This document shows, one piece after another, positions 6,936-21,050 of a stretch of DNA of 64,000 nucleotides. The position numbers and the translations under genes are program-made. Under the pieces are notes generated by a model, which had not been told where the DNA came from, ran no database searches, and worked only from the letters and a program-made list of their open reading frames with translations. Positions within the stretch are counted from its first letter, which is position 1. Every line of letters begins with the position of its first letter. The DNA lies in the IMG/VR virus record IMGVR_UViG_3300028840_002431, positions 310,001-374,000 of that record, one strand, 5' to 3'.

Positions 6936-9900
6936 TTACGCCTTTCTAGCTAGTTGGATGGTGGAGGGGTCGATGAGCAACTTGACGTGATCGCTGACCA
7001 TCGGGTGCCCCTCGATACGGTAGAGATCGGCCGCCGCATACCCCTCGCCAGCCCCGTTGGTGCCGATAAGGACCAGCCCAGGCTCAAGACCCGCCGCTGG
7101 CCGATTGACGTTTGTCAAAACGAGCAACATCAACTCATCCCCGGCCGAAACCTCGTTAGAACCCACGTTCGTGACAGTGTTACGAACCAGGAGCGCTCGA
7201 CCCTGAATGACGTTCACATGGTCTGTGTTAACGACCTGTAAAGAGTTCTGTAATGACACCGACGAACCAGGGTGTGACCCGTTACCCGTGAACACCGACC
7301 CACCACGAAGCACGCGGAAATTGGTGAGCAACGAGTAGTTGCCTTGCTCGCCGTCCACGTGGACCAGGACATCTCCCGGCGAACCAACGCCCGAAGACGA
7401 CGTGCTCAGTGGGATTTCCGCCTGTTCGACCTCACTGTTGGCCGCAAAGCCAGTCGAAGGACCGTTCGCCACGACATTCTCGTAAACGAGTGCTGCGGGT
7501 AGGAACCCGTACACCTGACCACGGAAGTCCTTGTCCCGGAACAGCGAACCTAACGGCAACCTCTCCGTGCATCCCACGTACTCCGTACCGACGTTGGTAG
7601 CGTCGGAGGGATCGAAGTTGCCAGGGAGAGAGTTGGGCCGGTCAGCGACCGCCGAAGACGGCGGGTAAACGGCCGGATCTTCGTAGGCCACGTCCTTGAA
7701 GTCGAGTTCGTCGGTCGTGGCGTCCGCCGAATAACGGCCCGTCCCAAGTGTTGTGGAGAAACCGGTTGAAGCCAGGATTTCTAACACCTTCTCGTTCGGC
7801 CGTGTCAGATTGTCCTGATCCAACTCCGTGGACACGATTTCATACGCTGTGCCCGAAGTTAGAGGACCCGGCGTGTACGGGATGTCAATGTAGTTGGTCT
7901 GACTGCCCCACGCATCGCCCTGGTATGGTGTGCGCGAGTAGTTGATCAGGATCTGATCAGCCTGTTCGGCCGGTCCAGGGAGAAGCCCAGCCGGGGTGGC
8001 TACGAACTCGTTGAGGTTCTGGCTCCGGTCCGAAAGATGAACGGTCCCGGTTCCAACATCCTCCCAACCGTTGAGGTTCGGGGATATCGCCTGGGGGCGT
8101 CTCATGACCAACCGGAATTCGGAGTCGAGATCGAAGGACCCTCTGTCGAATCCAAAAACAACAGCCTCGATCACGTAGTTGCCCGACGCGAAATCAGGGA
8201 TCGGCACAGGAGACTTGGATATATCGATCGCATTCGCGTTCAGAATGAAGGTGGAGTCCCCGTCATCGTCGATTTCGATCCACAAGGGCGCTCCGTCGCC
8301 GGGTTGCATGGTTTGACGAAGCAAGTTCACAGCCGTGCCAATTCCACCCGTCGCACGCTCGTTAGTGAAGGGGCTGTCGTTGGTTGTGTAGTCCGACGCC
8401 TCGTACACACCAAAGATACGAACCACACCGTAAAACGGAGGAAACTCCAAGCCCTCGCGACCCAACCCTCGCGTGTCGGTGAAGAACCGCATCCCGGCCC
8501 ATTCGTTACTGCCGGTTCCCGTGATGGCGGTGTTGTATGGAATGGGCGTAGAGGTCGGATCTACCTGACTGAATATACAATACTCGTTCGAGCCACCGCT
8601 GCCGTTGAAGTACGCCGCGTAGTTGCTCTGGGTCGGGGTCACGGTCCCCGGAAGGCTCCGGATCATGTAGTTGATACCGCTGGCAAAGGTAGTCCCGTCG
8701 GTGTGCCGTAAGGGTATATGAAGCTCTCCCCACCCAGGAACTAAGTGCCGGGGCAAGGATACGTATATGTTCTTCCAAGACGCCCCAGGCGCAGTCTCAC
8801 CACAAAACAGATTCAATGGGTCAGTTGTGGTCCACTTGGGGGTGGAGTTGTCCGCCTTGAGAAGAGGCATCACACCTTGCGCCTCATGTACAGTGAAAGT
8901 GACAGCACCTGCTTTGGCTCTGACAGACCGATCCACTTGGATCGAGGTGGCGGGGACAACGTTAGTTATAGTGTAACGGCCCGCCCCAACGTTGCCGCTG
9001 GCGATAATCAGGGCGTCTCCTGCCGCTGCCGTGCCAGTCACACCCATAGTTATAGTGTCGCTGTTATCACCTGAGAGCGTGCCCGTAGTGGGAGAGCCAG
9101 CCTTCGCAGTCGAAACCGGATTAGCCGCGTCCCCGTCAACCGTTAACGGGGTCGTGAAGTCCATGCGTCGAAACGGCGTGGCCATCACGGTCTTACTGCC
9201 CAGGTCCGCGTACATCTCGGATGTGACCGGGAGCAAGTTGTTAAAAGTGCTGGACCTGTACTTGCTCCACAGGGGTGCCCATCCAACACGTGCCTGAAGG
9301 TTGTTGTTGGGGATACCCCACTGTTGGGTAAGAAGATCCGCACCGGGATTGAGGTACGAAATGGAGTGTAAGGAATCAGGCCGACGAGACAGACCGCGTC
9401 CAGGTCCATACACAGCGTGTACCTTGATGTGTAACAAACGGGGCGAATCAGTGGTCGTTAATTGATCCGGGAAAGTGCCACCTAGCGTGATCGTGAGATC
9501 GTCCCCTGGTCCGGGCACCGCTGGTGTCACTGTGTACATCGAAGACGGCATAGCGTCCGTCTCCCCGTCGAAACGAAGCTCGACGGCCCCAGCGACACTA
9601 TCGTTCAGCCATCGGATCTGGTCCGTGGCACCGGCCTGTAAGCCGGTCTTGAGTTGGTTGACCGGTATTACGATGATATCGCCAGCCGTGAACTGGTTGG
9701 CCACAGTCTGGTTCGTAGTCTCGACCGTGATGTCTAACGACCACGAAACGTTGATCGCCACGCCTGGACCCGGAGGCACAACACCCGTGTTCGGCTGGCA
9801 TACGCACTCTATAGGCTGGACCGTAGCCGCATCAGAATAGACCATCCGGATATTGTCCGGAGCATCCAACTGTGTGACACCCAAGGACACCGCCGCCGAC

Positions 9901-11276
9901 TGGATGGCGTCCTGGTAGTGAACGAAGGAACCCTGAGGCCCCGCGCCGGATCTCTTCCAGTTGGCCCTGAGTTGGCCTCGTAGAAGCTTGTCGAGATTGG
10001 AACGGAGAAGGGTTGTGAAATCCATTCCGTTTGGATTAACCAAATGGCGGAGATCCAGAATGTCAGTGTTAGCAATCTGATCAGAAAACAACTCGTCAGG
10101 GCGTCCTGAAATAACCGTGATGGTCGAACCGGACAAATGACCCTGTGCCAAGGTTCCGTTCAGACCACGGGTCAGACCGCTGATTGTGGTCCCTGTGATC
10201 GACGAGTACGTCATGATCTCGTCGTTGATCTGAATCGTCACAGGGGTGGCCGGTGTGGTGGGCAACGGAATGTTGCTCGCGCTCACAAGGGTCGCCGTTG
10301 TGTCCGTGTCAGTGATGTCGGCGTCCAACGTGGGAACCGTCGAGAAGGTTTTAACACCAGTCCTATCAACAGCCGTGGGGTTACGGTCGAACGCGCCGTT
10401 CAGATTCTGAGACGGATTGCCATTCCATGAGACTGTGTTGCGACGAAAGATAACGGCGATAGGGACCGCGTACGAATAACCGTCTACTGATCCCAGATCG
10501 TTCTGAGTGCCGTCTCCCGCTCGCCAAAGGCCCGGATCTCCCAGAGCCTGTCGCATGTTGGTGAAAGTGTAAGAAGTTGGAGATGCAGCCGCGCCCTGAG
10601 CCTTCACCACCACCGGGTCAAACCCATCAGGATAGGTGGTCAGCCCGACCAGACCCTTCACAACTCGGATACGATATTGAAGCTGAACCCTTTGCTCGGT
10701 TTCAAAACCCAGAGCCGGATCAACTAGATCGTCGGCCAAGTAGCTCCAACCACCTTCTACGTTACCATAACGGTAAATCGCGCTGGCCGAAGGCTTGTTT
10801 GTGGTCGATGGGTCAGGTTGAATCCTGGCCTTCCAAACTTCCAAAAAAGCGAAGTCGATGCGAAAGTCCCCGGAGTTCTCGGGAGGCGGGTCCAACGCGA
10901 TAACGTTGGTCGTATCTGTGTCGTTTGGAGATCCAGGAGGAGTCCCTGTCCGTGTCCCCGTGACCGGAATGAGCCAACCATTGACGTTGGCCCACATGAC
11001 GGACTTCTGCTCGCCTGACTTTTGCGGGCCGAATTTGAACCAGTTAGACCAGTTCGCGTCCGTGATGAAGTCAGCCTGAGGGTTAGTCTCGTTCCCCAAA
11101 AAACCAGAAGGCATGTCGCGCAAAAGCGCTGATTGTACCGATCCGCTGGCCAGTTGCTGCATCAGGTTCAGGGCCGCGTCTGTCGGAGGCTTGCCTTCTT
11201 GCCAGATAGCAAGTTGATATAGGGTCTCGTCCGCTAGAAGAACCCTGGATACCCCAGAGCCAAAATTGTCTGTCAT
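6936..11276 (-). CDS. large virion tail/baseplate protein, DUF4815/DUF6519-like N-terminus
   Basis: 1446 aa, T/G/P/D-rich beta character; WQEGKPPTDAALNLMQ, FLEVW, RVQLQYRIRV and GDPGLW are shared with 29622..32195. Confidence 0.7.
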   Translation of the reverse strand: MTDNFGSGVSRVLLADETLYQLAIWQEGKPPTDAALNLMQQLASGSVQSALLRDMPSGFLGNETNPQADFITDANWSNWFKFGPQKSGEQKSVMWANVNGWLIPVTGTRTGTPPGSPNDTDTTNVIALDPPPENSGDFRIDFAFLEVWKARIQPDPSTTNKPSASAIYRYGNVEGGWSYLADDLVDPALGFETEQRVQLQYRIRVVKGLVGLTTYPDGFDPVVVKAQGAAASPTSYTFTNMRQALGDPGLWRAGDGTQNDLGSVDGYSYAVPIAVIFRRNTVSWNGNPSQNLNGAFDRNPTAVDRTGVKTFSTVPTLDADITDTDTTATLVSASNIPLPTTPATPVTIQINDEIMTYSSITGTTISGLTRGLNGTLAQGHLSGSTITVISGRPDELFSDQIANTDILDLRHLVNPNGMDFTTLLRSNLDKLLRGQLRANWKRSGAGPQGSFVHYQDAIQSAAVSLGVTQLDAPDNIRMVYSDAATVQPIECVCQPNTGVVPPGPGVAINVSWSLDITVETTNQTVANQFTAGDIIVIPVNQLKTGLQAGATDQIRWLNDSVAGAVELRFDGETDAMPSSMYTVTPAVPGPGDDLTITLGGTFPDQLTTTDSPRLLHIKVHAVYGPGRGLSRRPDSLHSISYLNPGADLLTQQWGIPNNNLQARVGWAPLWSKYRSSTFNNLLPVTSEMYADLGSKTVMATPFRRMDFTTPLTVDGDAANPVSTAKAGSPTTGTLSGDNSDTITMGVTGTAAAGDALIIASGNVGAGRYTITNVVPATSIQVDRSVRAKAGAVTFTVHEAQGVMPLLKADNSTPKWTTTDPLNLFCGETAPGASWKNIYVSLPRHLVPGWGELHIPLRHTDGTTFASGINYMIRSLPGTVTPTQSNYAAYFNGSGGSNEYCIFSQVDPTSTPIPYNTAITGTGSNEWAGMRFFTDTRGLGREGLEFPPFYGVVRIFGVYEASDYTTNDSPFTNERATGGIGTAVNLLRQTMQPGDGAPLWIEIDDDGDSTFILNANAIDISKSPVPIPDFASGNYVIEAVVFGFDRGSFDLDSEFRLVMRRPQAISPNLNGWEDVGTGTVHLSDRSQNLNEFVATPAGLLPGPAEQADQILINYSRTPYQGDAWGSQTNYIDIPYTPGPLTSGTAYEIVSTELDQDNLTRPNEKVLEILASTGFSTTLGTGRYSADATTDELDFKDVAYEDPAVYPPSSAVADRPNSLPGNFDPSDATNVGTEYVGCTERLPLGSLFRDKDFRGQVYGFLPAALVYENVVANGPSTGFAANSEVEQAEIPLSTSSSGVGSPGDVLVHVDGEQGNYSLLTNFRVLRGGSVFTGNGSHPGSSVSLQNSLQVVNTDHVNVIQGRALLVRNTVTNVGSNEVSAGDELMLLVLTNVNRPAAGLEPGLVLIGTNGAGEGYAAADLYRIEGHPMVSDHVKLLIDPSTIQLARKA

Positions 11277-11294
11277 GTCTTTTTACCTTCTGAT

Positions 11295-11315
11295 GTGATC
11301 CCGGAAGTGATCCCG
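11295..11315. repeat. direct repeat GTGATCCCG x2 (12-nt period) in the divergent intergenic region
   Basis: Copies at 11295-11303 and 11307-11315. Confidence 0.6.
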
Positions 11316-11420
11316 TTCAAAAAGGGTGGGCTTATAAGGACATTTGGAACAAACGACGACCGCCAGCGCCCCCTGGTACACCACCCCCAGAAGTGTTATC
11401 TTTGGAAAGTAGAATTTCTC

Positions 11421-11449
11421 TTGAATTTCGCCCTTCCCATCAGTAGTCC
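11421..11449 (+). promoter_or_regulatory. possible sigma70-like promoter for a leaderless lipoprotein mRNA
   Basis: TTGAAT-17 nt-TAGTCC ends 4 nt before ATG 11454 and no SD is visible; the -10 match is poor. Confidence 0.25.
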
Positions 11450-11453
11450 GAAT

Positions 11454-13778
11454 ATGGAAAGGTTTTTACTTCTAACCCTCATTCTGGCGGCGGCTTGTGG
11501 TTCTAACCCCGCCTCAACTGACGACCCCAACCCGGTCGAATTACCACCCACTGTTATAAACAGTGATGCTGGAATTCCCGACGCAGAAGAGCCTCCCGCC
11601 CCTGATGGCGGCCCTCCCGTTGTGGATTCCGGCCCTCCAATTCAGGACGGCGGTCAACCACCCGTTGAAGACGCTTCCGACGCGGCCACAGAGCCTATAG
11701 ACGCCGGAAACCTCGATTCTGGAGCGGATGCCGGGGATTCCGGCATCCCGGACACCGGCTCTGACGCCAGCGACAGCGGAACTGACGGCGGCTCTCCGGA
11801 GTGTACGAGCGGTACGAAGAAATGCGTCGCTCTAACGGTCCACGAGTGTGTAGACGAAACCTGGACAGAGCAGAACACTTGCCCTTACATCTGCGACAAC
11901 GGGACATGCAAAGGAGTCTGCGAACCCGGCGACACCCGTTGCGACGGCAAGGACTCCCAGGAATGCGGGGCCGACGGCAAGTGGGTGACGACAACCACTT
12001 GCCCCTACATATGTTCAGGAGACGGAGACTGTATGGGTAGTTGCGCCCCGAATGATAAGGACTGCGACGGCCTCGTTCCGCGAACATGCGGGGCCGACGG
12101 CGAATGGGACAATGGTTCGGCCTGTCCTTACGTTTGCTCTGGTGGTGATTGTACCGGGGTCTGCGTCCCTACCACTAACCGCTGCGACGGGAATAAATCC
12201 CAGACGTGTAACGCGGCCGGTCAGTGGACTACGAACCAAACATGCCCCTACCTTTGCACCGGGGCCGGAAACTGTACCGGGGAGTGCTCCCCAACCTCCA
12301 AACGGTGTGATGATCTGACGCCACAGACGTGCGACGCCAACGGCTTCTGGCAAAGCGGCTCTGACTGTCCTTACGTTTGCGACGGCGGTGACTGCACTGG
12401 CGTTTGTGTACCTGAGACCGATCGCTGCGACGGAAGAGACTCGCAGACTTGTAACGCTTCTGGTCAATGGCAATCGACCCGAACCTGTCCTTACGTCTGC
12501 ACCGGAGAAGGTGACTGTACCGGCGAGTGCTTCCCCGACACCAAGAGTTGCCAGGGAGACGTGCCTAGAACATGTAACGACCAAGGGGAGTGGGTAGAAG
12601 GTTCCGAATGCGAGTTCGTTTGCATGGGCGGTAACTGTATGGGTGTCTGCGAACCCGGCGACACCATGTGCCAAGGCGAACAAATCCGGACTTGTACGGC
12701 GGTGGGGCAGTGGGGTGGCCCCGGCAACTGTGACGCCGTACCAGGAGCCGATTCATATTGCGACGCCGGGTCCTGTACTTACGCTTGCGACCTCGATTAC
12801 GACGACTGTGACGGCAACACCGATAACGGTTGTGAAGTCAATCTTAGCACCGACACCGACCATTGCGGAAGCTGTGACAATTACTGTTGCGGCGGGACCT
12901 GTACCGACGGGGCTTGTGGCGTCAACGTTACCGGCCTCTACGGCAACTACGAGGTCGATGACGAGAACCTCTACTGGGTAGAGGGGCGGGACCTAAACCG
13001 ACGCTCGCGGACGGGGAATGGTAGCGACGCCACGACGATGAACACGCTGCCCGCTGGTAACATCGACGATATCGACTCGAACGGGACCTTGATCTTCTGG
13101 ACCCAAGACGCCGACACGGACAGCGGCCTGTACGCCATGCCGGTCGAAGGCGGCGACATCGTGAAGTACAACAGTAGCGCCAAGGATGACGAGCTTGTTC
13201 TTGGACCTGACCGGGCTTTGTACCATGTCAGTGGCGGCAATTGGGTTGGCTACGAGCTTATCGATGAACCCTACCAGAGTGCTGGCGGAGCGGGATTCGA
13301 CCAACAACCCACCTATTATGTCTCGGACGGCACCTATATGTACGTCGCATCCGGCTCTCTACAGCCGTTGCAGCGGTACCAATACACCTTCCCTCAGACG
13401 AAAGACGACTTCGTCACCTCAGAGGCATCCAACTACGAGTTCGGCCGGTTGGCCATCGACTCGACCAACCTCTACTACATCTTCTTCAACGCCATTACCC
13501 CGTCGGAGAACGGCGTCTGGAAGAAGCCCCTGAGCGGCGGAAGTCCTACTCAACTGGCGGCTGTGCCCAACGTCTGGTCGATCGCCACTGACGGCGAGTA
13601 CGTCTACTACGCGGAACACGTCGGGTCGGGTAACATGAACATCCAACGAGTCCCTGTAGGGGGCGGCGACTCGGAACTCCTGGTCAACCGTGCGTCGATC
13701 TTCGATATCAAACTGGCCGGTGGCTGCGTCTACTGGAACGAGTACGGACAGGTCCACGCCATCTCTGGCGCACCTTAA
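11454..13778 (+). CDS. myxobacterial-type Cys-rich repeat lipoprotein with C-terminal beta-propeller-like domain
   Basis: Start reassigned to ATG 11454 (MERFLLLTLILAAA-C, a lipobox). Followed by a DAG/DSG acidic linker, about 8 six-Cys repeats, a DCDGNTDNGCEVNLSTDTDHCGSC motif, and VDDENLYW / AIDSTNLYY / ATDGEYVYY propeller blades. Confidence 0.8.
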   Translation: MERFLLLTLILAAACGSNPASTDDPNPVELPPTVINSDAGIPDAEEPPAPDGGPPVVDSGPPIQDGGQPPVEDASDAATEPIDAGNLDSGADAGDSGIPDTGSDASDSGTDGGSPECTSGTKKCVALTVHECVDETWTEQNTCPYICDNGTCKGVCEPGDTRCDGKDSQECGADGKWVTTTTCPYICSGDGDCMGSCAPNDKDCDGLVPRTCGADGEWDNGSACPYVCSGGDCTGVCVPTTNRCDGNKSQTCNAAGQWTTNQTCPYLCTGAGNCTGECSPTSKRCDDLTPQTCDANGFWQSGSDCPYVCDGGDCTGVCVPETDRCDGRDSQTCNASGQWQSTRTCPYVCTGEGDCTGECFPDTKSCQGDVPRTCNDQGEWVEGSECEFVCMGGNCMGVCEPGDTMCQGEQIRTCTAVGQWGGPGNCDAVPGADSYCDAGSCTYACDLDYDDCDGNTDNGCEVNLSTDTDHCGSCDNYCCGGTCTDGACGVNVTGLYGNYEVDDENLYWVEGRDLNRRSRTGNGSDATTMNTLPAGNIDDIDSNGTLIFWTQDADTDSGLYAMPVEGGDIVKYNSSAKDDELVLGPDRALYHVSGGNWVGYELIDEPYQSAGGAGFDQQPTYYVSDGTYMYVASGSLQPLQRYQYTFPQTKDDFVTSEASNYEFGRLAIDSTNLYYIFFNAITPSENGVWKKPLSGGSPTQLAAVPNVWSIATDGEYVYYAEHVGSGNMNIQRVPVGGGDSELLVNRASIFDIKLAGGCVYWNEYGQVHAISGAP
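11802..12730 (+). repeat. coding tandem repeat, about 8 units of 39-41 aa with six Cys each
   Basis: Consensus CxPxxxRCDGxxxQTCxxxGxWxxxxxCPYVCxGGxCxGx. Confidence 0.9.
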
Positions 13779-14044
13779 CCAGACGGCCAGAGTAGTTTCA
13801 GAATCCAAACGGCCAGGGCGATCAGCACCGGGATTGCCCCGCCGATCAAACCCCACACGTGTGACTTGACCTTTAGAACACCGATCTCAACCTTCATATC
13901 GGTCATGTCCGACCGAATCTTCTCGATGTTCTGGCCTAGCCTCTTGATCTCCTTGAGGACGTGAATCGTGTATTCACTGACATCACGTTGCTGGCTGGGA
14001 CTTCGGGGAGGAGCGAGGCTGTCATCGTCATAATGTCGTGCCAT
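13775..14044 (-). CDS. small coiled-coil protein with C-terminal TM (XhlA/holin-like)
   Basis: Heptad stretch IKRLGQNIEKIRSDMTDMKVEI followed by a hydrophobic C-terminus. Confidence 0.55.
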   Translation of the reverse strand: MARHYDDDSLAPPRSPSQQRDVSEYTIHVLKEIKRLGQNIEKIRSDMTDMKVEIGVLKVKSHVWGLIGGAIPVLIALAVWILKLLWPSG

Positions 14045-14228
14045 TTAGTCTTCTTTCTCGTTCGACAATTCTATTTGCAAGCTTTTCGATCTTGACTATT
14101 TCCCCACCACTCTCCTCTTCTTTCTTGTGGTACCCGTTTTTCTTTCGGCGCTCCAACAAGCGGACGATTGCGACACTGGCGATGACAGAGATACAAACGG
14201 AAGCCAAAAGTAAAAACGCTGTTTCCAT
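14028..14228 (-). CDS. small N-terminal TM protein
   Basis: Strong SD GGAGGTGG; one TM followed by RRKK. Confidence 0.65.
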   Translation of the reverse strand: METAFLLLASVCISVIASVAIVRLLERRKKNGYHKKEEESGGEIVKIEKLANRIVERERRLNGTTL

Positions 14229-14252
14229 GCCACCACCTCCGTTAGAAACGAG

Positions 14253-15446
14253 TCATTTAACCAAATTATAAAACAGTTTTGCCCAGGAATTGGCAATTTC
14301 GCCCCAATTACAATGCTTTTTAATCCATGAGTAGGCGGCTCTGGACCGTTTAGCGGCTTCTTTTGGCCGGTCGTGTACGTCACAGATACAAGAGGCCATG
14401 CTATCAACCGATGTGAGCGGTCTGATGTGAGAATTATCGTATTCCGGCAAGACCGTGAAATCTGAGCAGTCGGCCAACCAGCCGCGTTCTTGACGCTCGC
14501 CAATGATCTCCTGACACGACGTGTGCCGTGGCATGACGACCGGAACCTTACAAGCCATAGCCTCCGTGGTGCTCAAACCCCACCCCTCCCCCAAGGTGGT
14601 GGACACGACAACATCAGAGGCACAATAAATATTCCTCAGGAGATCTTTTGGGAAGCCGCTCGGTCCAAAATCCCTAGGGTACAGAACGTCTCCCCGCAAT
14701 TCTTCGGGCACCTGACGGCTGATGAAATTGATAAGGTCTCCGTTCCCAGAGTGAACGTCGGTGTGTAAGTAGAGCTTCGCGTTTGAGATTCTTTCCTTGA
14801 CCTTCAGCCAAACCATTACCGTCCTCGGCAGATCCTTTCTCGGTTGATTCTTGTTCACGTTCGTGATGATGAAATCCTTCGAAGAAACCGAAAAAAGGTC
14901 CCGCTTCAACCTCTTACGCTTGGCTTTCTCGACAGGCTTGAACGTCTTGGTGTCAACACCATGGTATAAAACCCGCAACTTTTCGTCAGAGTGTTTCCGG
15001 ACCTCCCTCTTACCGTATTCGGTGTACGCGACAGCCCTGTCTGCCGTCTCCACAGCGTTCGTGACCCATAGCCGATCCAGCGGGGCGTCCACAGGGAAAT
15101 ACAAAGCGTATTTGAACTTCTTAGCCCCACGCACACGCCGGATGGACTCGTCCATGGATACAAGGTTGAAAGTATCCTGAAGGGCGAACAAAATATCATA
15201 GTCACCTTGCTCTAAAAGCTCGATGACCCTTCCACGGCCCAAGGGATCGCCGCCCGACGCAGCCGGGTACACTGGGATATCCCGGAACTTGTAATAAGGG
15301 CTGTTTTGTGTGTTGTAAGGGTCGCCGTGGTAATTGATCCCCACCACAGTAAATTCGAATCTGTCAACGAGCCGGGAAATCAACTCTTCGGCAACATTTC
15401 CGAATCCCGTCGGGCACAGGAAATCACTATACCAAAGGACCTTCAT
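14253..15446 (-). CDS. GT4-family glycosyltransferase
   Basis: TGFGNV N-terminal motif, HGVD, NKNQPRK, and STTLGEGWGLSTTEAMACKVPVV (EX7E). Confidence 0.92.
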   Translation of the reverse strand: MKVLWYSDFLCPTGFGNVAEELISRLVDRFEFTVVGINYHGDPYNTQNSPYYKFRDIPVYPAASGGDPLGRGRVIELLEQGDYDILFALQDTFNLVSMDESIRRVRGAKKFKYALYFPVDAPLDRLWVTNAVETADRAVAYTEYGKREVRKHSDEKLRVLYHGVDTKTFKPVEKAKRKRLKRDLFSVSSKDFIITNVNKNQPRKDLPRTVMVWLKVKERISNAKLYLHTDVHSGNGDLINFISRQVPEELRGDVLYPRDFGPSGFPKDLLRNIYCASDVVVSTTLGEGWGLSTTEAMACKVPVVMPRHTSCQEIIGERQERGWLADCSDFTVLPEYDNSHIRPLTSVDSMASCICDVHDRPKEAAKRSRAAYSWIKKHCNWGEIANSWAKLFYNLVK

Positions 15447-16451
15447 TCAAAACATTCTCTCGGTCCACGTCCTAGGCGTGTGTTGGTTACGGATCTCAAC
15501 TTCTATGTTGTAGTCGAACTTACGGGTCCCGTGGCGCTCGATGTGTGTGACAATGGACTCCAAGCCTTCTCTCAGAGGCACCTTGGCCTTGTAGCCAAGC
15601 CGCCGTCGAGCCTTGTCAGCCGAACAATTCGCAAACCGGACCTCCATCGGCCGGTCCGGGACATAGATTGGCTCAAGGTCTACCCCGATAATGTCAGCGA
15701 GGATTAGGGATAGCTCGTTTATAGTTATGAACGCATCGTCAGGACCAAGGTTGAACACTTCCCCGTCCAACCCCTCGTCAAACGCCAACCGCAACATAGG
15801 CTCAGCCACGTCACTAACAAACGAAAAACAACGCCGCTGTTCGCCGTCCCCGTAGATTATAGGTTGCCGTTTTTGCAGCATGAGGTTTGCCATGATGCTG
15901 GCAACGTTGCGAAACGGGTCATCCCACTTCTGTCGCGGACCAATGATGTTGTGGGGTACAACGGTTACGTGTTCCATCCCATGTACGCCACAAAGGTTAC
16001 GGAGCATTTGCTCTACAGAGACTTTACCGATCCCATAAGGATCTTGAGGCCGGGGTTCCATCTCCTCGACGAACGGCGTCTCGTTACTCCCGTACCGGGC
16101 CATGCTGGAACAATTCACAAAACGTCGGACCCCGTTCCGTACAGAAGCTGATATCAGCGACACAGACGCTTGGACGATATTCTGGGTGATGAACGAAGGG
16201 CTGAAAACGCTCAATCCTTCGTAGGCGGTGGCAGCACAATGGTACACAACCTCCGCGTCTCGGGTTAGGCGTGTCATGGCTTCCAGGTCGGCGCAATCCT
16301 CTTGGTAGAACTCCACCTCTTCGGACACGTTCGCCAGTTCACCGCCCACCAGATTGTCGCATCCGATGACGCGATGATCTTCTTTGACCAGAAGATCAGC
16401 CAAGTGGCTTCCCAGAAACCCCGCAACGCCTGATACAAATACTGTGCTCAT
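15447..16451 (-). CDS. NAD-dependent NDP-sugar epimerase/dehydratase (extended SDR)
   Basis: GVAGFLG Rossmann motif, SSMARYG, YGIGK (YxxxK), GDGEQRRCFSFV. Confidence 0.93.
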   Translation of the reverse strand: MSTVFVSGVAGFLGSHLADLLVKEDHRVIGCDNLVGGELANVSEEVEFYQEDCADLEAMTRLTRDAEVVYHCAATAYEGLSVFSPSFITQNIVQASVSLISASVRNGVRRFVNCSSMARYGSNETPFVEEMEPRPQDPYGIGKVSVEQMLRNLCGVHGMEHVTVVPHNIIGPRQKWDDPFRNVASIMANLMLQKRQPIIYGDGEQRRCFSFVSDVAEPMLRLAFDEGLDGEVFNLGPDDAFITINELSLILADIIGVDLEPIYVPDRPMEVRFANCSADKARRRLGYKAKVPLREGLESIVTHIERHGTRKFDYNIEVEIRNQHTPRTWTERMF

Positions 16452-16912
16452 GCTTGTTTCCTAGCCATCAAAACGGTGTCTGCTACGCCCATCGTGCATT
16501 CCAAAATATCCAGGTCCTTGAACAACCACGTCATACCGTCCGGAAAGATGCGCCAACAATCCTTTGGGTGCCGGTGGTGCCCCCACGTATGCGGGGCTAT
16601 TACACAGAGGTGGCCGCCCGGCTTCACGATCTTGATGATCGCATCACGCCAGCGATGGGTGTCCTCCACGTGCTCAAGAACCTGACCGCTAACGACAACA
16701 TCATACTGCTCATCCCCGAAGTCGTAGGTCCCTACGACACGATCCACGTTCGGCCCGGCGACAATATCTAAGCCCGTATAGGCGCACCCGTCGAACAGTT
16801 CTCGGTACGTGCCGTTCAAGTCGTAACTCCCCACGTCGGCCACACTACACGGAGGTTTCACATACTGTTCTACAAAAGCCCGCATGTAACTCATTGAAGA
16901 AGGGTGCATCAA
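16448..16912 (-). CDS. class I SAM-dependent methyltransferase (Methyltransf_11-like)
   Basis: ADVGS, GLDI, YDVVVSGQVLEHV, VKPGG, HRHPKDCWR; ATGA translational coupling. Confidence 0.88.
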   Translation of the reverse strand: MMHPSSMSYMRAFVEQYVKPPCSVADVGSYDLNGTYRELFDGCAYTGLDIVAGPNVDRVVGTYDFGDEQYDVVVSGQVLEHVEDTHRWRDAIIKIVKPGGHLCVIAPHTWGHHRHPKDCWRIFPDGMTWLFKDLDILECTMGVADTVLMARKQA

Positions 16913-18129
16913 ATCCTCCGGAGGTAGCCGTGCGGGTTCCAGGTTATTAAGAATGACTCTCTCGACCTATCAGCTTCGAAAGCCGGATTCTCCAGCAAGA
17001 ACGTGTGTACGGCTTCAAAAGGACCGGGAGATGGACCCACCTCCAAACCGTGGTGGCAGATGCCATCCTCAACGATGAAGTAACCTCCCCGCCCTACCAG
17101 CTTCGAATAGAGCCGAAGAATACCCAGTGTGTTCTCGTAGCCGTGGGAACTATCCTCGATGACCATCACCGACGCTCCCTCCGGAACCAACCGCTGCACC
17201 TCTTGGAAAACGTTAAGGGCGTTGCCCTCTATCAGACGTATCCTTGGGTGCGCCTTCACTTTCTCGGCCACCGCCGAGTGGTCTACGTCAATACCTAACA
17301 CCTCCCCTTTCCCCATCGCGTCACACAGGTGAGCGAGAGCCAACAAGGCTCCGCCACAGGCGTTGCCTATCTCGATTATGAGGTCCGGTTTCGTTTCATA
17401 GAGGAGTTCTTGATACACCCAAAAATCGACAGGACTCTGATACGCCCGGACCCCAAAATAACTGGTGTTCGTCATGATTTTGCGTTGCATCGCCTCAAGA
17501 ACTTCCCGCAACGGCGTGTCCAAGGACATCTCCATGGGCCTCAAAACCCCAGACACGTAGAAATACTTCCACGTGTCCCAGGACACGAGATTCAATAGCT
17601 CCGCTTTATTGTTTACCAAGAATTGGTAATCGAGGACCTCCGTCTTCGGGAAGCATTTCTGTGCCCCTCTCTCGATCACACCGCAACCGAGATCGACATC
17701 GACAACACGCATTGACAAGTCGGGCCGGTACATCCTGTTCCAAGCCCAAGCCTTCCACACGTCCCCGGTCCACAGCACCTGGACCGGAGGGACCCGTTGC
17801 GCGTCCTCTGACGGAGGTAGACAGTCGTGGAGAACGACCGCGCCTCCTTCGTTCAAACACGCGAGAGAGTTATCGATATCGCGTCTTACCTGATCGGCTA
17901 CATGATAACCGTCTATGAAAATCAGGTCCCAACGCTTGTCTTTTCCAGGCCCCGCGAAGAAGTCGTCAGATGACATTGCGTACGTCGCATCGTGGGCGGG
18001 GTCTACCGACTCTTTGTGTTCTACCAGAACACCATTGAAATTATCCTTCAACCCGACCCCTATCTCCAGATAGGTCTTATAAGAGCGGGCTGTGGCTAAA
18101 GTATTTAGGACTTGAGTGCGCGTTATCAT
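16909..18129 (-). CDS. fusion: Methyltransf_24-like plus CmcI/rhamnosyl O-methyltransferase-like domain
   Basis: Start reassigned to ATG 18129 (ATGA overlap). N-half has YLEIGV, DLIFIDGYH, VLHDC; C-half has YQELLYETKPDLIIEIG, MVIEDSSH, YFIVEDG, NPHGYL. Confidence 0.85.
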   Translation of the reverse strand: MITRTQVLNTLATARSYKTYLEIGVGLKDNFNGVLVEHKESVDPAHDATYAMSSDDFFAGPGKDKRWDLIFIDGYHVADQVRRDIDNSLACLNEGGAVVLHDCLPPSEDAQRVPPVQVLWTGDVWKAWAWNRMYRPDLSMRVVDVDLGCGVIERGAQKCFPKTEVLDYQFLVNNKAELLNLVSWDTWKYFYVSGVLRPMEMSLDTPLREVLEAMQRKIMTNTSYFGVRAYQSPVDFWVYQELLYETKPDLIIEIGNACGGALLALAHLCDAMGKGEVLGIDVDHSAVAEKVKAHPRIRLIEGNALNVFQEVQRLVPEGASVMVIEDSSHGYENTLGILRLYSKLVGRGGYFIVEDGICHHGLEVGPSPGPFEAVHTFLLENPAFEADRSRESFLITWNPHGYLRRI

Positions 18130-18971
18130 GGGAACATCGACGGAATAGCTACGTAACCACCAACCGGTTTCTTGCATTTAGGACAACGCGCCCTCTTAGA
18201 GACTATAGTGTTGAACTCCCCGCATGTCTCACAGGAGTAGTTCCCTATAACATCCCACGTCAATCGAAAATGAGTGGGCAACGGCAACAACTCGAACACT
18301 TCTTGTCGAGAGAACATCCCCGCTAAGTATATTTCCGGCCCTATACGATGCGGTACAACATGCGTCCAATTCGGGTGTGAGAAAAGACGGGCACTGTTCA
18401 CCCAGTAAAAAGATCCGCTAAACATCCATACATTCTCAGGGACCGGTAGCCCAACCGAAGACATAGAACCAAGCATTTTCTCTGACGGTTTCCCCCAAAA
18501 AGAGCCGCACGCGGCATACTTCGTTAAAATAGATTCGATCTTACCCACGTCGTGCAAACACTCGTGGTACATCCTGTTTCGCAATTGCCGCAAAGCTATC
18601 ATGTGGTGTTCGAAGCTCTCGCAAGGGTACGACTCGATCTCTTCACGGCGTTGGGGGTGCGTCACACCTTTATCATGAGCGTAAAATATAGCCTCGTCGG
18701 GATTCGAGGACTTGAGCATCGACAGGATGTCTATGAACCCAGCCGCTTCGTGTTGGCCAGGGTGGTTTGGTAGCTCTATGTATTCCACGTCCCTAACCCC
18801 GAACTCTGCCTTTACGGCGTCCGCAGACTCCAAACCCTCTCCGGTTCGTACAACCATGAGCCGACGGTTGTTGAAGGCGTCCATATACCGGCGTAACCAT
18901 CTAAGGTTATCCCGCCAGACCTCCGCGCCAGACTCTAACGGAGCGCAATTGTACACAAGGTTACGCAGCAT
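18126..18971 (-). CDS. RgpF/rhamnan-synthesis-like putative glycosyltransferase with C-terminal Zn ribbon
   Basis: IFYAHDKGVT (HxKG) and FSGSFYW motifs; C-terminal CETC...CPKC. Confidence 0.55.
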   Translation of the reverse strand: MLRNLVYNCAPLESGAEVWRDNLRWLRRYMDAFNNRRLMVVRTGEGLESADAVKAEFGVRDVEYIELPNHPGQHEAAGFIDILSMLKSSNPDEAIFYAHDKGVTHPQRREEIESYPCESFEHHMIALRQLRNRMYHECLHDVGKIESILTKYAACGSFWGKPSEKMLGSMSSVGLPVPENVWMFSGSFYWVNSARLFSHPNWTHVVPHRIGPEIYLAGMFSRQEVFELLPLPTHFRLTWDVIGNYSCETCGEFNTIVSKRARCPKCKKPVGGYVAIPSMFP

Positions 18972-20310
18972 CCTCGTCCTCGTAGTACACCTTGTTCTTT
19001 TCTTGCGGATCTACGATGGTATCGCCCACAGGGCTGTGTAACGTGCCTGTGTGATACTTTAGCCCTATATGAGGCAGCCAGAGCTTCACCCCTTCTTCAC
19101 ACAGGCCCTCGTACGGAACGATCTCAACTTCGGCTCCGTTGGCCTTGAGTTCCGTAATGTTCCTAACGAGGGTCCTATTGCGCGACCCAAGCATCGAGCC
19201 TAAGTCGTTCGTGAAACCATGTTTTTTAATGGCCGACCTCATAGCCGCGATAGGTTCTCTGATCATGACAACACCTGTTATATGGGAGTATCCGGCTCGA
19301 CGTAGGCCGCCCACCCATCCGACAATATTGCCGTGTTGGACCATGACAAACGGCTCGCCTTTGGACACTAGGATTTCTTCTTCTCTCTGTGGTTGCTCGT
19401 CGCCATGAAACCCAATGCAACCGCTTCTGAGCAATATAGAGGCCATCAGCCTATTCCCGCTGGCGACCGGACCGCACACCAGATACGCCGCGTGGATCAA
19501 ACCATGATCACGGAACTCGATAGGTTCTAGCCAGTCATAGCCAAACGGGTGCCACCACATCACCTCACCAGCGAGATGAGGATAGTGTCTTGGTTTTATG
19601 GCAGTCTTCGACAAGATCGACGGGCCGTCCGTAATCCGTTCACAGAAAAAGCTGCCCAAATCGGCCGCGCCGACGATATTGACATAGTGGGTAGACATCA
19701 GCTTCTGCATGATGGGCCAGAAGCGTTTGATGTCGTGATACTCGCCCGCCATGAACCGGATTCTCTTGAGCGTCTTCTCAGACGCAGACCCCAGAAAACT
19801 ACACTCCGCCCCCTCACTATCTGTCTTTAAATAATCTAGCTCCTCTCCCTCGTTCACTATGTCGTTCAACGCCTCTTCCAGAGTTTTGCACGCCACGGTG
19901 TCCGCCAGTTCTTTGTGGTTTCCCCCACTGGCTACCCCGGCTGGCGCGATGAAAGAGCCGCCTTCGTACCCAGGACCGCCATCCGGTAAGCCTAGGTACA
20001 CATGTAAGGGGCCTTGACCCCCTCGCGGAACCTCTCCAAAATCATCCTGGTACAAATGTGCCGCTGTCACAGCCTCTGAGCGGATCTGTACCTGTTTGAG
20101 ACCTTGCGTTTTGGACCGCGCCTTTTGCGCGTATCTCTCTACTGGTTCATAAGACACGATACGTGCTTCTGGAAAGCATTTCGCCATCTCGATGGTGATA
20201 TCACCGACGTTCGCACCCACCTCTAAAATGGTCCTGATAGGCGGCCCTTTCTGTGCGTCTACGAACCGTCGGATCGTGTAATATTTGTAACAGGCATTGC
20301 CTTCCATCAC
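18961..20310 (-). CDS. fusion: FkbM-family methyltransferase plus sulfotransferase-like domain
   Basis: LEVGANVG, YEP, LKTDSEGAE, GEYH (FkbM); then VCGPVASGNRLM, IREPIAAMRS, VPYEGL (5'PSB, 3'PB and YEDL-like motifs). Confidence 0.75.
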   Translation of the reverse strand: MMEGNACYKYYTIRRFVDAQKGPPIRTILEVGANVGDITIEMAKCFPEARIVSYEPVERYAQKARSKTQGLKQVQIRSEAVTAAHLYQDDFGEVPRGGQGPLHVYLGLPDGGPGYEGGSFIAPAGVASGGNHKELADTVACKTLEEALNDIVNEGEELDYLKTDSEGAECSFLGSASEKTLKRIRFMAGEYHDIKRFWPIMQKLMSTHYVNIVGAADLGSFFCERITDGPSILSKTAIKPRHYPHLAGEVMWWHPFGYDWLEPIEFRDHGLIHAAYLVCGPVASGNRLMASILLRSGCIGFHGDEQPQREEEILVSKGEPFVMVQHGNIVGWVGGLRRAGYSHITGVVMIREPIAAMRSAIKKHGFTNDLGSMLGSRNRTLVRNITELKANGAEVEIVPYEGLCEEGVKLWLPHIGLKYHTGTLHSPVGDTIVDPQEKNKVYYEDEDAA

Positions 20311-21050
20311 TTACCCCACTTAAATCTGTCTTCTACGTCCCAACGAATATGATCTTCTACCAACTGTTGGGGAGAAAGAGTCTTGATGTTACCCACCATG
20401 TGCTCAAACTTATAATCCCCCCATGTGTAGGTGACACGACCATCCGTCGCCACACAGATGCTCTTACCGCCTCCGTAGACCGGGTCCCACTTATACAAGG
20501 GGCGCGATGCTTGGTACGTTATGTTAGGGGCCGTTATCTCAAAACCGCGCCAGTCGTCCGAAAAAGATACGACATGGATGTTGTCAAATTCAGCGTGCCG
20601 ATCGAGCAGGTTCAAAAGGTTAGCTTTAGCGGTTGGGTAGTGGTCCGTTCGAGTTCGACGGGCGTATTCTTCTTCCCCTGTCTCGAACATGCTAAACCAT
20701 ACCCGACGTAAGCCGATGTTTTTAAGTTCGGTCAACCGGGCGTCGTTGAGCAAGACTCCGTTGGTACAAAGCCAGACTCTGGTGTTGGGCAACGCGCACA
20801 CACGTTTTAAATAGGCGTCTAGCCCTTTGAACAACAACGGTTCCCCGGCGACGTGTGGGTAGAACCAGAAGGTACAGTCGGGGTTCGCGTGTAACAATTG
20901 CACCACCGCGTCCATGGTCTCCTGGTCCACAAACGGGGGCCGGTCAACTTTTTCCTCCATCCCGCCCACGCACATGGAACACCGGTTCTGACAGTGAGTG
21001 GTAACTTCACTGTAAAGCAACGCTACTCTTGCATCGCAGGTTTCGGTCAC
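20307..21050 (-). CDS. radical SAM protein
   Basis: EVTTHCQNRCSMC (CxxxCxxC), GEPLL, TNGVLL. Confidence 0.9.
   Translation of the reverse strand: MTETCDARVALLYSEVTTHCQNRCSMCVGGMEEKVDRPPFVDQETMDAVVQLLHANPDCTFWFYPHVAGEPLLFKGLDAYLKRVCALPNTRVWLCTNGVLLNDARLTELKNIGLRRVWFSMFETGEEEYARRTRTDHYPTAKANLLNLLDRHAEFDNIHVVSFSDDWRGFEITAPNITYQASRPLYKWDPVYGGGKSICVATDGRVTYTWGDYKFEHMVGNIKTLSPQQLVEDHIRWDVEDRFKWGK

What the first reader, a model, noticed from the sequence alone, without database searches (positions are those of the whole stretch)
11454..13778. Lone opposite-strand myxobacterial-type surface lipoprotein inserted in the tail module
Seen: the only convincing plus-strand gene in 64 kb, with its own intergenic region and a stop codon overlapping the convergent gene (TTAA 13775-13778). 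Architecture is lipobox, DAG-rich linker, disulfide-repeat stalk, DCDG..NGCE..L..D..HCG.C motif and a propeller head. Known: this architecture is characteristic of Myxococcota (especially Polyangia) exported proteins, and myxobacteria exchange outer-membrane lipoproteins through TraAB. Inference: it points to the host and is a captured moron acting in superinfection exclusion, adhesion or kin-recognition interference. It might even be passed to neighbouring cells.
Basis: partly seen in the sequence, partly recalled or inferred. Interest (0 to 1): 0.7.

Follow-up and report, generated by a model that had tools for sequence, protein, structure and literature searches.

The report
Huge-phage stalked propeller lipoprotein
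A 416-kb phage and at least a dozen related huge phages carry a separately transcribed gene for a large lipid-anchored envelope protein (flexible tether, rigid disulfide stalk, seven-bladed propeller head) whose head changes far faster than the rest of the genome, which suggests a tool for manipulating the host cell surface rather than a chance pick-up.

Summary
Window 11454-13778 (+) is a real 774-aa gene and the only real plus-strand gene in the 64 kb. It has a lipobox (Cys15), a 100-aa disordered linker, eight 40-aa six-Cys repeats, a DCDG/NGCE/CCGG cap and a propeller. AlphaFold2 gives pLDDT 92 for the head, and the best structural matches are seven-bladed.

The window is part of a 416.5-kb virus record. 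The gene is not a lone recent capture:
- Full-length homologues (34-47% identity) with a conserved lipobox sit on at least 12 other huge-phage-like contigs (up to 434 kb).
- In 8 of 13 contexts they lie beside a conserved ~1445-aa tail-appendage-like gene.
- In the window and its closest relative the gene also borders a hypervariable glycan-synthesis island.

The propeller is 22-46% identical between phages whose neighbouring gene is 52-81% identical. Only the stalk resembles cellular proteins, mostly lipoproteins, and all five that carry an organism name are Myxococcota. A myxobacterial host is therefore plausible but not shown.

My best reading is a phage-made outer-membrane lipoprotein that binds a variable envelope ligand, for example for superinfection exclusion. 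That function is inferred. TraAB transfer is untested.

The parts
11277..11453 (+). 177-nt upstream region shared with the divergent 1446-aa gene. It holds a conserved hairpin-like element followed by GCTTATAAGG (11330-11339).
   Evidence: The element aligns with the upstream regions in L002, L005 and L018, and partly in L003. The motif occurs only here among intergenic sites of the 416-kb genome. There is no Rfam match and no unusual fold energy, and no sigma-70-like site.
11454..11498 (+). Lipoprotein-type signal peptide MERFLLLTLILAAA|C, with Cys15 as the predicted lipidation site.
   Evidence: Read from the sequence. All 22 N-terminally complete family members keep a lipobox, with G/S/T at +2.
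11499..11798 (+). Disordered P/D/G/S/A-rich tether, residues 16-115.
   Evidence: Composition. pLDDT is below 50 for residues 1-115. It is not conserved beyond the closest relative.
11799..12758 (+). Stalk of eight ~40-aa six-cysteine repeats, residues 116-435.
   Evidence: Cys spacing. The modules are beta-hairpin-rich with pLDDT 70-88. They match thousands of proteins. No Pfam or NCBIfam family matches.
12759..12923 (+). Cap motif C..C...C.LDYDDCDG..NGCE..L..D..HCG.C...CCGG.C...C, residues 436-490.
   Evidence: It is the most conserved part, with 13 invariant columns and 43-69% identity between phages. It occurs as a repeat unit in giant cellular proteins. No Pfam family covers it.
12924..13775 (+). 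Seven-bladed beta-propeller head, residues 491-774. Cys758 is nearly invariant.
6936..11276 (-). Divergent neighbour: a conserved 1446-aa protein that looks like a tail appendage.
   Evidence: Residues 303-391 hit tail and tail-fibre PHROGs. The N-terminal ~290 aa are 35% identical (E 3e-39) to the 857-aa protein at 29622-32195 in the baseplate block. It is 52-81% identical across relatives. It lies next to the lipoprotein gene in 8 of 13 contexts.
13775..14228 (-). Two small convergent membrane-protein genes: 89 aa with a C-terminal TM segment, and 66 aa with an N-terminal TM segment.
   Evidence: ORFs and sequences. Homologues in L002 are 84% and 54% identical.
14253..21050 (-). Glycan-synthesis and modification island: GT4 glycosyltransferase, NAD-dependent sugar epimerase/dehydratase, SAM methyltransferases including an RMNT/CmcI rhamnosyl O-methyltransferase domain, FkbM, and radical SAM.
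   Evidence: Pfam and PHROG hits. In the closest relative, L002, the same position holds entirely different sugar genes that have no match in this genome.

Best explanation
This is an independently transcribed accessory gene of a clade of huge phages. It encodes a host-envelope lipoprotein.

Shown:
- The domain order is SPII-type signal with lipobox Cys15, a ~100-aa disordered tether, eight disulfide-knotted modules, a conserved Cys-rich cap, and a seven-bladed propeller.
- The lipobox is conserved across the family.
- The gene is recurrently linked to a ~1445-aa tail-appendage-like gene. In the two phages compared, it also sits at the edge of a hypervariable glycan island.
- The propeller diverges far faster than the neighbouring genes.

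Inferred:
- The protein is made in the infected cell, exported by Sec, lipidated, and sorted to the outer membrane. The +2 residue is G/S/T, never D or K.
- The 58 non-lipid cysteines form disulfides in the oxidising envelope. The odd Cys count in stalk plus cap suggests that Cys758 staples the head to the cap.
- The stalk holds the propeller tens of nanometres from the membrane, where it binds a variable envelope or extracellular ligand.

Most likely role, about 40%: it masks or occupies adsorption sites for this or rival phages, giving superinfection exclusion and protecting progeny from cell debris. It would do this together with the adjacent glycan-remodelling genes.
For: - The gene is real and conserved. 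Homologues reach E 1e-216, with full coverage on contigs of 116-433 kb. Further copies sit on IMG/VR contigs of 208-411 kb.
- The lipobox is kept in 22 of 22 complete members. By a crude regex it is the only lipobox protein in the 416-kb genome.
- The structure models are confident, and the fold matches are propellers.
- Of 197 other stalk-bearing proteins, 110 also begin with a lipobox and carry varied heads (FGE-sulfatase, LamG, RCC1, NHL). The stalk is therefore a display platform for lipoproteins.
- The gene lies next to the tail-appendage-like gene in 8 of 13 contexts and within 6 kb in 10.
- The glycan island beside it is replaced wholesale in the nearest relative.
- Propeller identity is 22-46%, against 52-81% for the neighbour, over 45 phage pairs and without correlation. 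Against the closest relative the values are stalk 66%, cap 60% and propeller 32.5%, while flanking genes are 54-84%.
- Precedents for phage lipoproteins in exclusion are T5 Llp, whose gene is adjacent to the gene for the receptor-binding protein pb5 (PMC9586334), and Ltp (PMC3952083).
Against: - There is no homology to Llp, Cor, Ltp or any PHROG of known function.
- The protein is ten times larger than the known exclusion lipoproteins.
- The neighbouring 1446-aa protein is conserved rather than variable, so the head does not visibly co-vary with a receptor-binding protein.
- Lipidation, membrane sorting, surface exposure, timing of expression, ligand and host are all untested. No RNA run holding the gene was found.
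- The propeller fold is generic and says nothing about the ligand.
Confidence: 0.45

Rival explanations
1. It is a cell-cell or cell-substrate recognition or adhesion receptor, working like myxobacterial TraA: a lipid anchor, a rigid Cys-rich stalk and a polymorphic head. The phage would use it to change how infected cells stick to or recognise neighbours, prey or surfaces.
For: The design logic is the same as TraA's PA14 head, Cys-rich stalk and lipid-type anchor (PMC3325183). The head is hypervariable. The stalk is shared with Myxococcota proteins.
Against: There is no PA14 domain, no TIGR04201 repeat and no MYXO-CTERM tag. The anchor is at the opposite end of the protein. The homodimer prediction for the head gave no answer. 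The host is unknown.
Confidence: 0.15
2. It is a periplasm-facing lipoprotein that reaches across the envelope to bind a host machine, as BamB, TolB or LpoB do. That would either modulate outer-membrane or cell-wall biogenesis during a long huge-phage infection, or block a receptor allosterically from inside, as T5 Llp does.
For: Llp acts from the periplasmic face (PMC9586334). BamB propeller lipoproteins are among the fold hits at TM about 0.5. The long tether resembles linkers that reach through peptidoglycan (from general knowledge).
Against: A target inside the periplasm would be conserved, and that fits poorly with a head only 22-46% identical between close phages. The cellular stalk proteins carry heads typical of secreted or surface proteins.
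Confidence: 0.12
3. It is a lectin-like partner of the adjacent glycan island. It would bind or organise the phage-modified polysaccharide (O-antigen, EPS or capsule) on the infected cell.
For: The gene sits directly at the border of a hypervariable sugar-gene island. Both the head and the island vary between close relatives.
Against: In other relatives the gene lies elsewhere, for example between SNF2 and DnaJ in L019 or next to P63C and methyltransferase genes in L003. No carbohydrate-binding family was detected.
Confidence: 0.13
4. It is a virion component, a tail-fibre accessory or receptor-binding protein encoded beside the fibre gene.
For: It is adjacent to a tail-appendage-like gene. 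Some BFVD propeller matches are labelled as tail fibres.
Against: The SPII lipobox is conserved in all complete members. Its 58 cysteines need an oxidising compartment, whereas tailed-phage virions assemble in the cytoplasm (general knowledge). In 12 of 13 contexts the gene is transcribed against the neighbouring - strand genes or lies in a mixed-strand region.
Confidence: 0.05
5. One reading: a recently captured host (myxobacterial) moron with no long history in the phage.
For: The stalk resembles Myxococcota lipoproteins at 40-47% identity. The gene has its own upstream region.
Against: Orthologues with the same full architecture occur in at least 12 related huge-phage contigs whose GC ranges from 44 to 65%. 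The GC of the gene region (0.554-0.581) is close to the genome's (0.55). No cellular full-length homologue was found.
Confidence: 0.05

Closest known systems
Phage T5 Llp and the Cor lipoproteins (superinfection exclusion)
   Same: They are phage-encoded lipoproteins targeted to the host outer membrane. The T5 llp gene lies adjacent to the gene for the receptor-binding protein pb5 (PMC9586334).
   Different: Llp and Cor are small single domains that act at the periplasmic face of FhuA. This protein has 774 aa with a tether, stalk and propeller and shows no sequence similarity to them. Its neighbour is conserved, not a variable receptor-binding protein.
Myxococcus TraA cell-surface receptor
   Same: It has a rigid cysteine-rich repeat stalk presenting a polymorphic recognition head on a lipid-type anchor (PMC3325183). 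The stalk-type proteins are also associated with Myxococcota.
   Different: TraA has an N-terminal PA14 head, TIGR04201 repeats and a C-terminal MYXO-CTERM tag. Here the anchor is an N-terminal lipobox, the head is a C-terminal propeller, and no TIGR04201 or PA14 match was found.
Cellular lipobox-stalk-head proteins of Myxococcota, for example those with an FGE-sulfatase head
   Same: They share the six-Cys ~40-aa stalk repeat at 40-47% identity, and most have an N-terminal lipobox.
   Different: Their heads are FGE-sulfatase, LamG, RCC1, NHL or EGF domains. The combination of DCDG cap and this propeller was seen full-length only on phage-like contigs.
LDL-receptor family ectodomains (LRP6, LRP2/megalin) and DUF5050 propellers
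   Same: They combine disulfide-rich small modules with a propeller. The top Foldseek hits are LRP6, LRP2 and DUF5050 proteins, and there is a sub-threshold PF16472 match.
   Different: YWTD propellers have six blades. This head superposes best on seven-bladed propellers. Global TM is only about 0.2. The resemblance is one of architecture, not membership.
Ltp-type surface lipoproteins of Streptococcus phages
   Same: They are phage-encoded, surface-exposed lipoproteins that exclude superinfecting phages (PMC3952083).
   Different: They come from Gram-positive prophages, have small helical repeat domains, and show no homology.

Membership tests
Bacterial lipoproteins (SPII/Lgt-Lsp substrates) | A short N-region with K/R, an uncharged hydrophobic core, and a lipobox [LVI..][ASTG..][GAS]C with the Cys at about position 15-35. 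| tested here: met
   The N-terminus is MERFLLLTLILAAAC. The same layout is found in 22 of 22 complete homologues.
Bacterial lipoproteins (SPII/Lgt-Lsp substrates) | Actual acylation and signal peptidase II cleavage. | not testable with these tools
   This needs globomycin and palmitate labelling. SignalP and LipoP were not available.
T5 Llp / Cor exclusion lipoproteins | Sequence homology to Llp or Cor. | tested here: not met
   The only PHROG hit is an unknown-function family, on one stalk repeat. Pfam and NCBIfam give nothing relevant.
T5 Llp / Cor exclusion lipoproteins | The gene lies next to a tail or receptor-binding gene. | tested here: met
   It is adjacent to the ~1445-aa tail-appendage-like gene in 8 of 13 contexts. 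The receptor-binding role of that protein is not shown.
T5 Llp / Cor exclusion lipoproteins | Blocks adsorption by inactivating the receptor. | not testable with these tools
   This needs a host and phage adsorption assays.
TraA kin-recognition receptor | A PA14 variable domain. | tested here: not met
   No PA14 hit in Pfam at E<=1. The head is a propeller.
TraA kin-recognition receptor | TIGR04201 Cys-rich repeats and a MYXO-CTERM (TIGR03901) tag. | tested here: not met
   NCBIfam gave 0 families at E<=1. The C-terminus is the last propeller blade, ending ...HAISGAP.
DUF5050 / LRP1-like beta-propeller (PF16472) | A Pfam score above the gathering threshold. | tested here: inconclusive
   It scores 25.4 bits against a cut-off of 27, covering residues 681-770 only. 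Homologues P0003, P0022, P0028 and P0107 carry precomputed PF16472 hits. The best AFDB cluster hit is a DUF5050 protein.
YWTD/LDL-receptor class B propeller | A six-bladed propeller with Ldl_recept_b repeats flanked by EGF domains. | tested here: not met
Moron (independently transcribed extra gene, present in some relatives and absent in others) | Its own transcription unit set apart from the surrounding operon. | tested here: met
   It is on the opposite strand, with a 177-nt upstream region holding a conserved gene-specific element. No promoter was identified.
Moron (independently transcribed extra gene, present in some relatives and absent in others) | A sporadic, recent insertion relative to close relatives. 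| tested here: not met
   It is present in every related contig that covers the region. Its position shifts, but the gene is kept.
o-spanin (Rz1-type lysis lipoprotein) | A small proline-rich outer-membrane lipoprotein encoded with an i-spanin, holin and endolysin. | tested here: not met
   It has 774 aa, and no lysis gene was recognised next to it. The two small downstream membrane proteins are uncharacterised.

The most novel reading that the evidence does not exclude
Huge phages of Myxococcota-like hosts encode their own polymorphic, lipid-anchored, stalked cell-surface receptor, a functional mirror image of TraA. It would reprogram contact-dependent social behaviour of infected cells: adhesion, kin recognition or outer-membrane exchange. 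As an outer-membrane lipoprotein it could itself be handed to neighbouring cells, marking or protecting them.
Probability: 0.08. Interest if true: 0.85.

Novelty: new variant of a known kind. Interest (0 to 1): 0.5.

Why it matters
Known phage-encoded envelope lipoproteins (Llp, Cor, Ltp, Bor, spanins) are small. This family is large and modular. It is conserved across a clade of 200-430-kb phages and has a head that diversifies much faster than the genome, the pattern expected at a host or rival-phage interface.

It gives a concrete, testable handle on how uncultivated huge phages remodel the host surface. It offers a candidate host marker, the stalk shared with Myxococcota lipoproteins. It also defines two uncurated cysteine-rich modules and a seven-bladed propeller family that could be added to domain databases.

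Tried and rejected
- Homodimer prediction of the head: no answer. It is not evidence either way.
- Genome-contig scan with the head alignment. The first alignment was too diverse. The second found only one Myxococcales MAG locus, matching the cap motif.
- Control phylum for the stalk tally. An E. coli record only yields a W handle, which has no relatives, so phylum specificity could not be measured.
- Host signal from the neighbouring epimerase. Named hits at about 60% identity are Woesearchaeota, Nanoarchaeota, Planctomycetaceae and Gammaproteobacteria, which is uninformative.
- The listing of cluster members returned no organism names.
- The upstream element as a genome-wide phage promoter. 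The motif is unique to this gene. There is no Rfam family, no unusual RNA fold (z = +1.25) and no sigma-70-like site.
- The stalk and cap as known families. Pfam and NCBIfam are negative for this protein. Giant cap-repeat proteins give only a weak Stig1 hit.
- The 1446-aa neighbour. Pfam and PDB sequence searches are negative. The Atlas lead to DUF4815 scores 0.86 and is only a lead.
- Literature. No paper pairs a phage-encoded lipoprotein with a beta-propeller. A myxophage CRISPR survey does not mention huge phages of this type or lipoproteins.
- o-spanin and virion-protein readings were rejected (see the membership tests and rival explanations).
Full report
**Context**

The window is bases 310001-374000 of a 416,539-bp linear IMG/VR virus record. 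CheckV puts its completeness at 87% and its GC is 55%. The genome carries about 52 tRNA genes and a tmRNA, so this is a huge phage. From about 285 kb to the end, nearly all genes are on the minus strand.

**Observation**

The ORF at 11295-13778 (+) is the only real plus-strand gene in the window.
- All other + ORFs of 150 aa or more lie inside longer - ORFs.
- Two that a crude caller picked are shadows of - genes with homologues in a related phage.
- The supported start is ATG 11454 (774 aa, P0002), because homologues begin at the equivalent M-E/D-K/R.
- The stop TAA (13776-13778) overlaps the stop of the convergent 89-aa gene within TTAA 13775-13778.
- Contigs of 82-120 kb from three runs cover 10500-14500 without a single difference. 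These runs may be the source samples. The same gene order also recurs in other assemblies, so a chimeric assembly is excluded.

**Anatomy**

- Residues 1-15 are MERFLLLTLILAAAC, a lipoprotein-type signal.
- Residues 16-115 are P/D/G/S/A-rich and modelled as disordered, with pLDDT below 50.
- Residues 116-435 hold eight modules of about 40 aa. Each has six Cys, with a constant spacing of 7-8-12-4-5/6-4. They are modelled as beta-hairpin units with pLDDT 70-88.
- Residues 436-490 are the most conserved part, C..C...C.LDYDDCDG..NGCE...HCG.C...CCGG.C...C.
- Residues 491-774 form a beta-propeller. The model of residues 436-774, built on 28 sequences, has pLDDT 92.3 and pTM 0.90.
  - Foldseek ranks LRP6 and LRP2 propellers, BamB and DUF5050 proteins first.
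  - Pfam gives only a sub-threshold DUF5050 hit, 25.4 bits against 27. NCBIfam gives nothing.
- The stalk and cap hold 57 Cys, an odd number. The propeller has one nearly invariant Cys (C758), so a cap-to-head disulfide is likely. This is an inference.

**Relatives**

Full-length homologues (34-47% identity, 100% coverage) lie on contigs of 116, 149, 283, 291, 398, 411 and 433 kb. Others lie on contigs of 167 and 182 kb, 208 and 323 kb and 434 kb.

All 13 gene neighbourhoods inspected look like the same kind of huge phage. They contain an SNF2 helicase, a DnaJ-domain protein, AdoMet decarboxylase, homing endonucleases and very large structural proteins.

All 22 N-terminally complete members keep the lipobox, with G, S or T at +2.

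The gene usually points against its neighbours, but in L033 it lies in tandem with the large gene. Its position shifts:
- beside the ~1445-aa gene in the window, L002, L005, L018, L027, L029, L031 and L033;
- 1.6 kb from that gene in L004;
- 6 kb from it in L003;
- between the SNF2 and DnaJ genes in L019.

It is therefore an old, clade-wide accessory gene and not a lone recent insertion.

**Neighbours**

The 1446-aa protein hits tail and tail-fibre PHROGs at residues 303-391. It shares an N-terminal module of about 290 aa (35% identity, E 3e-39) with the 857-aa protein encoded in the baseplate block. That pattern is typical of alternative tail appendages with a common anchor. The protein is well conserved, at 52-81% identity.

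On the other side lie two small membrane-protein genes. Beyond them is an island of glycan genes: GT4, an epimerase/dehydratase, a rhamnosyl O-methyltransferase-type domain, FkbM and radical SAM. In the nearest relative this island is replaced by unrelated sugar genes.

**Evolutionary rate**

Figures against the closest relative (L002):

| Region | Identity |
|---|---|
| Flanking genes | 54-84% |
| Lipoprotein, whole | 47% |
| Stalk | 66% |
| Cap | 60% |
| Propeller | 32.5% |

Over 45 pairs of ten phages, the propeller is 22-46% identical, or too diverged for BLAST to detect. The neighbour is 52-81% identical, and the two do not correlate. The head is therefore either diversifying rapidly or being shuffled between phages.

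**Link to cells and host**

Only the stalk, and separately the cap, has strong cellular relatives. There are about 3,900 representative proteins at E<=1e-3.
- Of 197 retrieved non-head proteins, 110 begin with a lipobox. They carry other heads, such as FGE-sulfatase, LamG, RCC1, NHL and EGF.
- The five that carry an organism name are Polyangia, Chondromyces, Vulgatibacter, Myxococcales and 'Deltaproteobacteria'.
- Atlas leads also name Myxococcota, but at low scores.
- In 301 genomes of the phylum of a Myxococcales MAG, 23 match the stalk at E<=1e-10. Thirteen match two or three blades of the propeller weakly. None holds the full protein.
- I could not run a control phylum.
- A neighbouring epimerase gives no host signal.
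- The phage clade has 44-65% GC. The Myxococcota loci hit have 62-71%, apart from one at 47%.

A Myxococcota host is plausible, about even odds, and not demonstrated.

**Mechanism**

Shown: the domain order, the conserved lipobox, the confident propeller, the linkage to the tail-appendage-like gene, the position at the edge of the glycan island in the two phages compared, and the fast-evolving head.

Inferred:
- export and lipidation;
- outer-membrane sorting. Neither the D(+2) rule of E. coli nor the K(+2) retention signal described for M. xanthus applies. This is from my own knowledge;
- disulfide formation in the envelope;
- a stalk roughly 20 nm or longer that displays the head.

My preferred function is binding of a variable envelope ligand to block adsorption. 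This would give superinfection exclusion or protect progeny from debris. The precedents are T5 Llp, whose gene is adjacent to that of pb5 (PMC9586334), and Ltp (PMC3952083).

Rivals are a TraA-like adhesion or recognition receptor (design analogy, PMC3325183), a periplasmic binder of host machinery, a lectin partner of the glycan island, and a virion protein. The virion reading is disfavoured by the lipobox and the 58 cysteines. The homodimer test of the head returned no answer.

**Verdict**

This is a new, large, modular variant of the known kind 'phage-encoded envelope lipoprotein'. It is of moderate interest.

Noticed in passing
G000:C1 64058-93894 and 209611-229594 (outside the window): The phage genome carries about 52 tRNA genes in two clusters and a tmRNA with the tag peptide ANDNAAPLAIAA (G000:C1 88026-88405).
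   Followed up: no
window 11286-11343: A gene-specific upstream element, a hairpin-like CCC..GGG with apparent compensatory changes followed by GCTTATA(A/G)GGA. It is conserved in four or five related phages and travels with the gene. It is unique in the genome, has no Rfam match, and resembles the TATAGGGAGA start region of T7-type promoters.
   Followed up: partly
window 14253-21050 versus L002 13116-22334: The glycan-synthesis island next to the gene is completely different in the closest relative, which has a dTDP-sugar isomerase, sulfotransferase, GSCFA, radical SAM/SPASM and GT2 genes. It is a hypervariable surface-sugar cassette.
   Followed up: partly
window 6936-11276 and 29622-32195: The 1446-aa and 857-aa proteins share an N-terminal ~290-aa module (35% identity). 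They are probably alternative tail appendages with a common anchor. L005 shows the same pair.
   Followed up: partly
window 13775-14228: Two small conserved membrane-protein genes. One encodes 89 aa with a coiled-coil-like segment and a C-terminal TM segment, the other 66 aa with an N-terminal TM segment. They lie convergent to the lipoprotein gene, and their function is unknown.
   Followed up: no
L005 1-1951 and 8893-9753; L004 2450-3073: Homing-endonuclease-type genes sit beside or near the lipoprotein gene in relatives: LAGLIDADG in L005 and T5orf172/MUG113 in L004. The L005 SNF2 helicase carries intein and LAGLIDADG hits. This may explain why the gene's position shifts.
   Followed up: no
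L033 3079-3716 and 6995-7447: A related phage contig carries ParE/ParD and a PIN-domain gene just upstream of its lipoprotein gene.
   Followed up: no
P0129, P0154, P0157, P0194 (search hits): The ~55-aa DCDG/NGCE/CG.C cap motif occurs as 20-40 tandem copies in giant cellular proteins and has no Pfam family. Only one weak Stig1 hit was found.
   Followed up: partly
L002, L003/L030 versus L017, L018: Related phages that carry this gene span 44-65% GC. That is a wide range for one clade and may mean the hosts are diverse.
   Followed up: no
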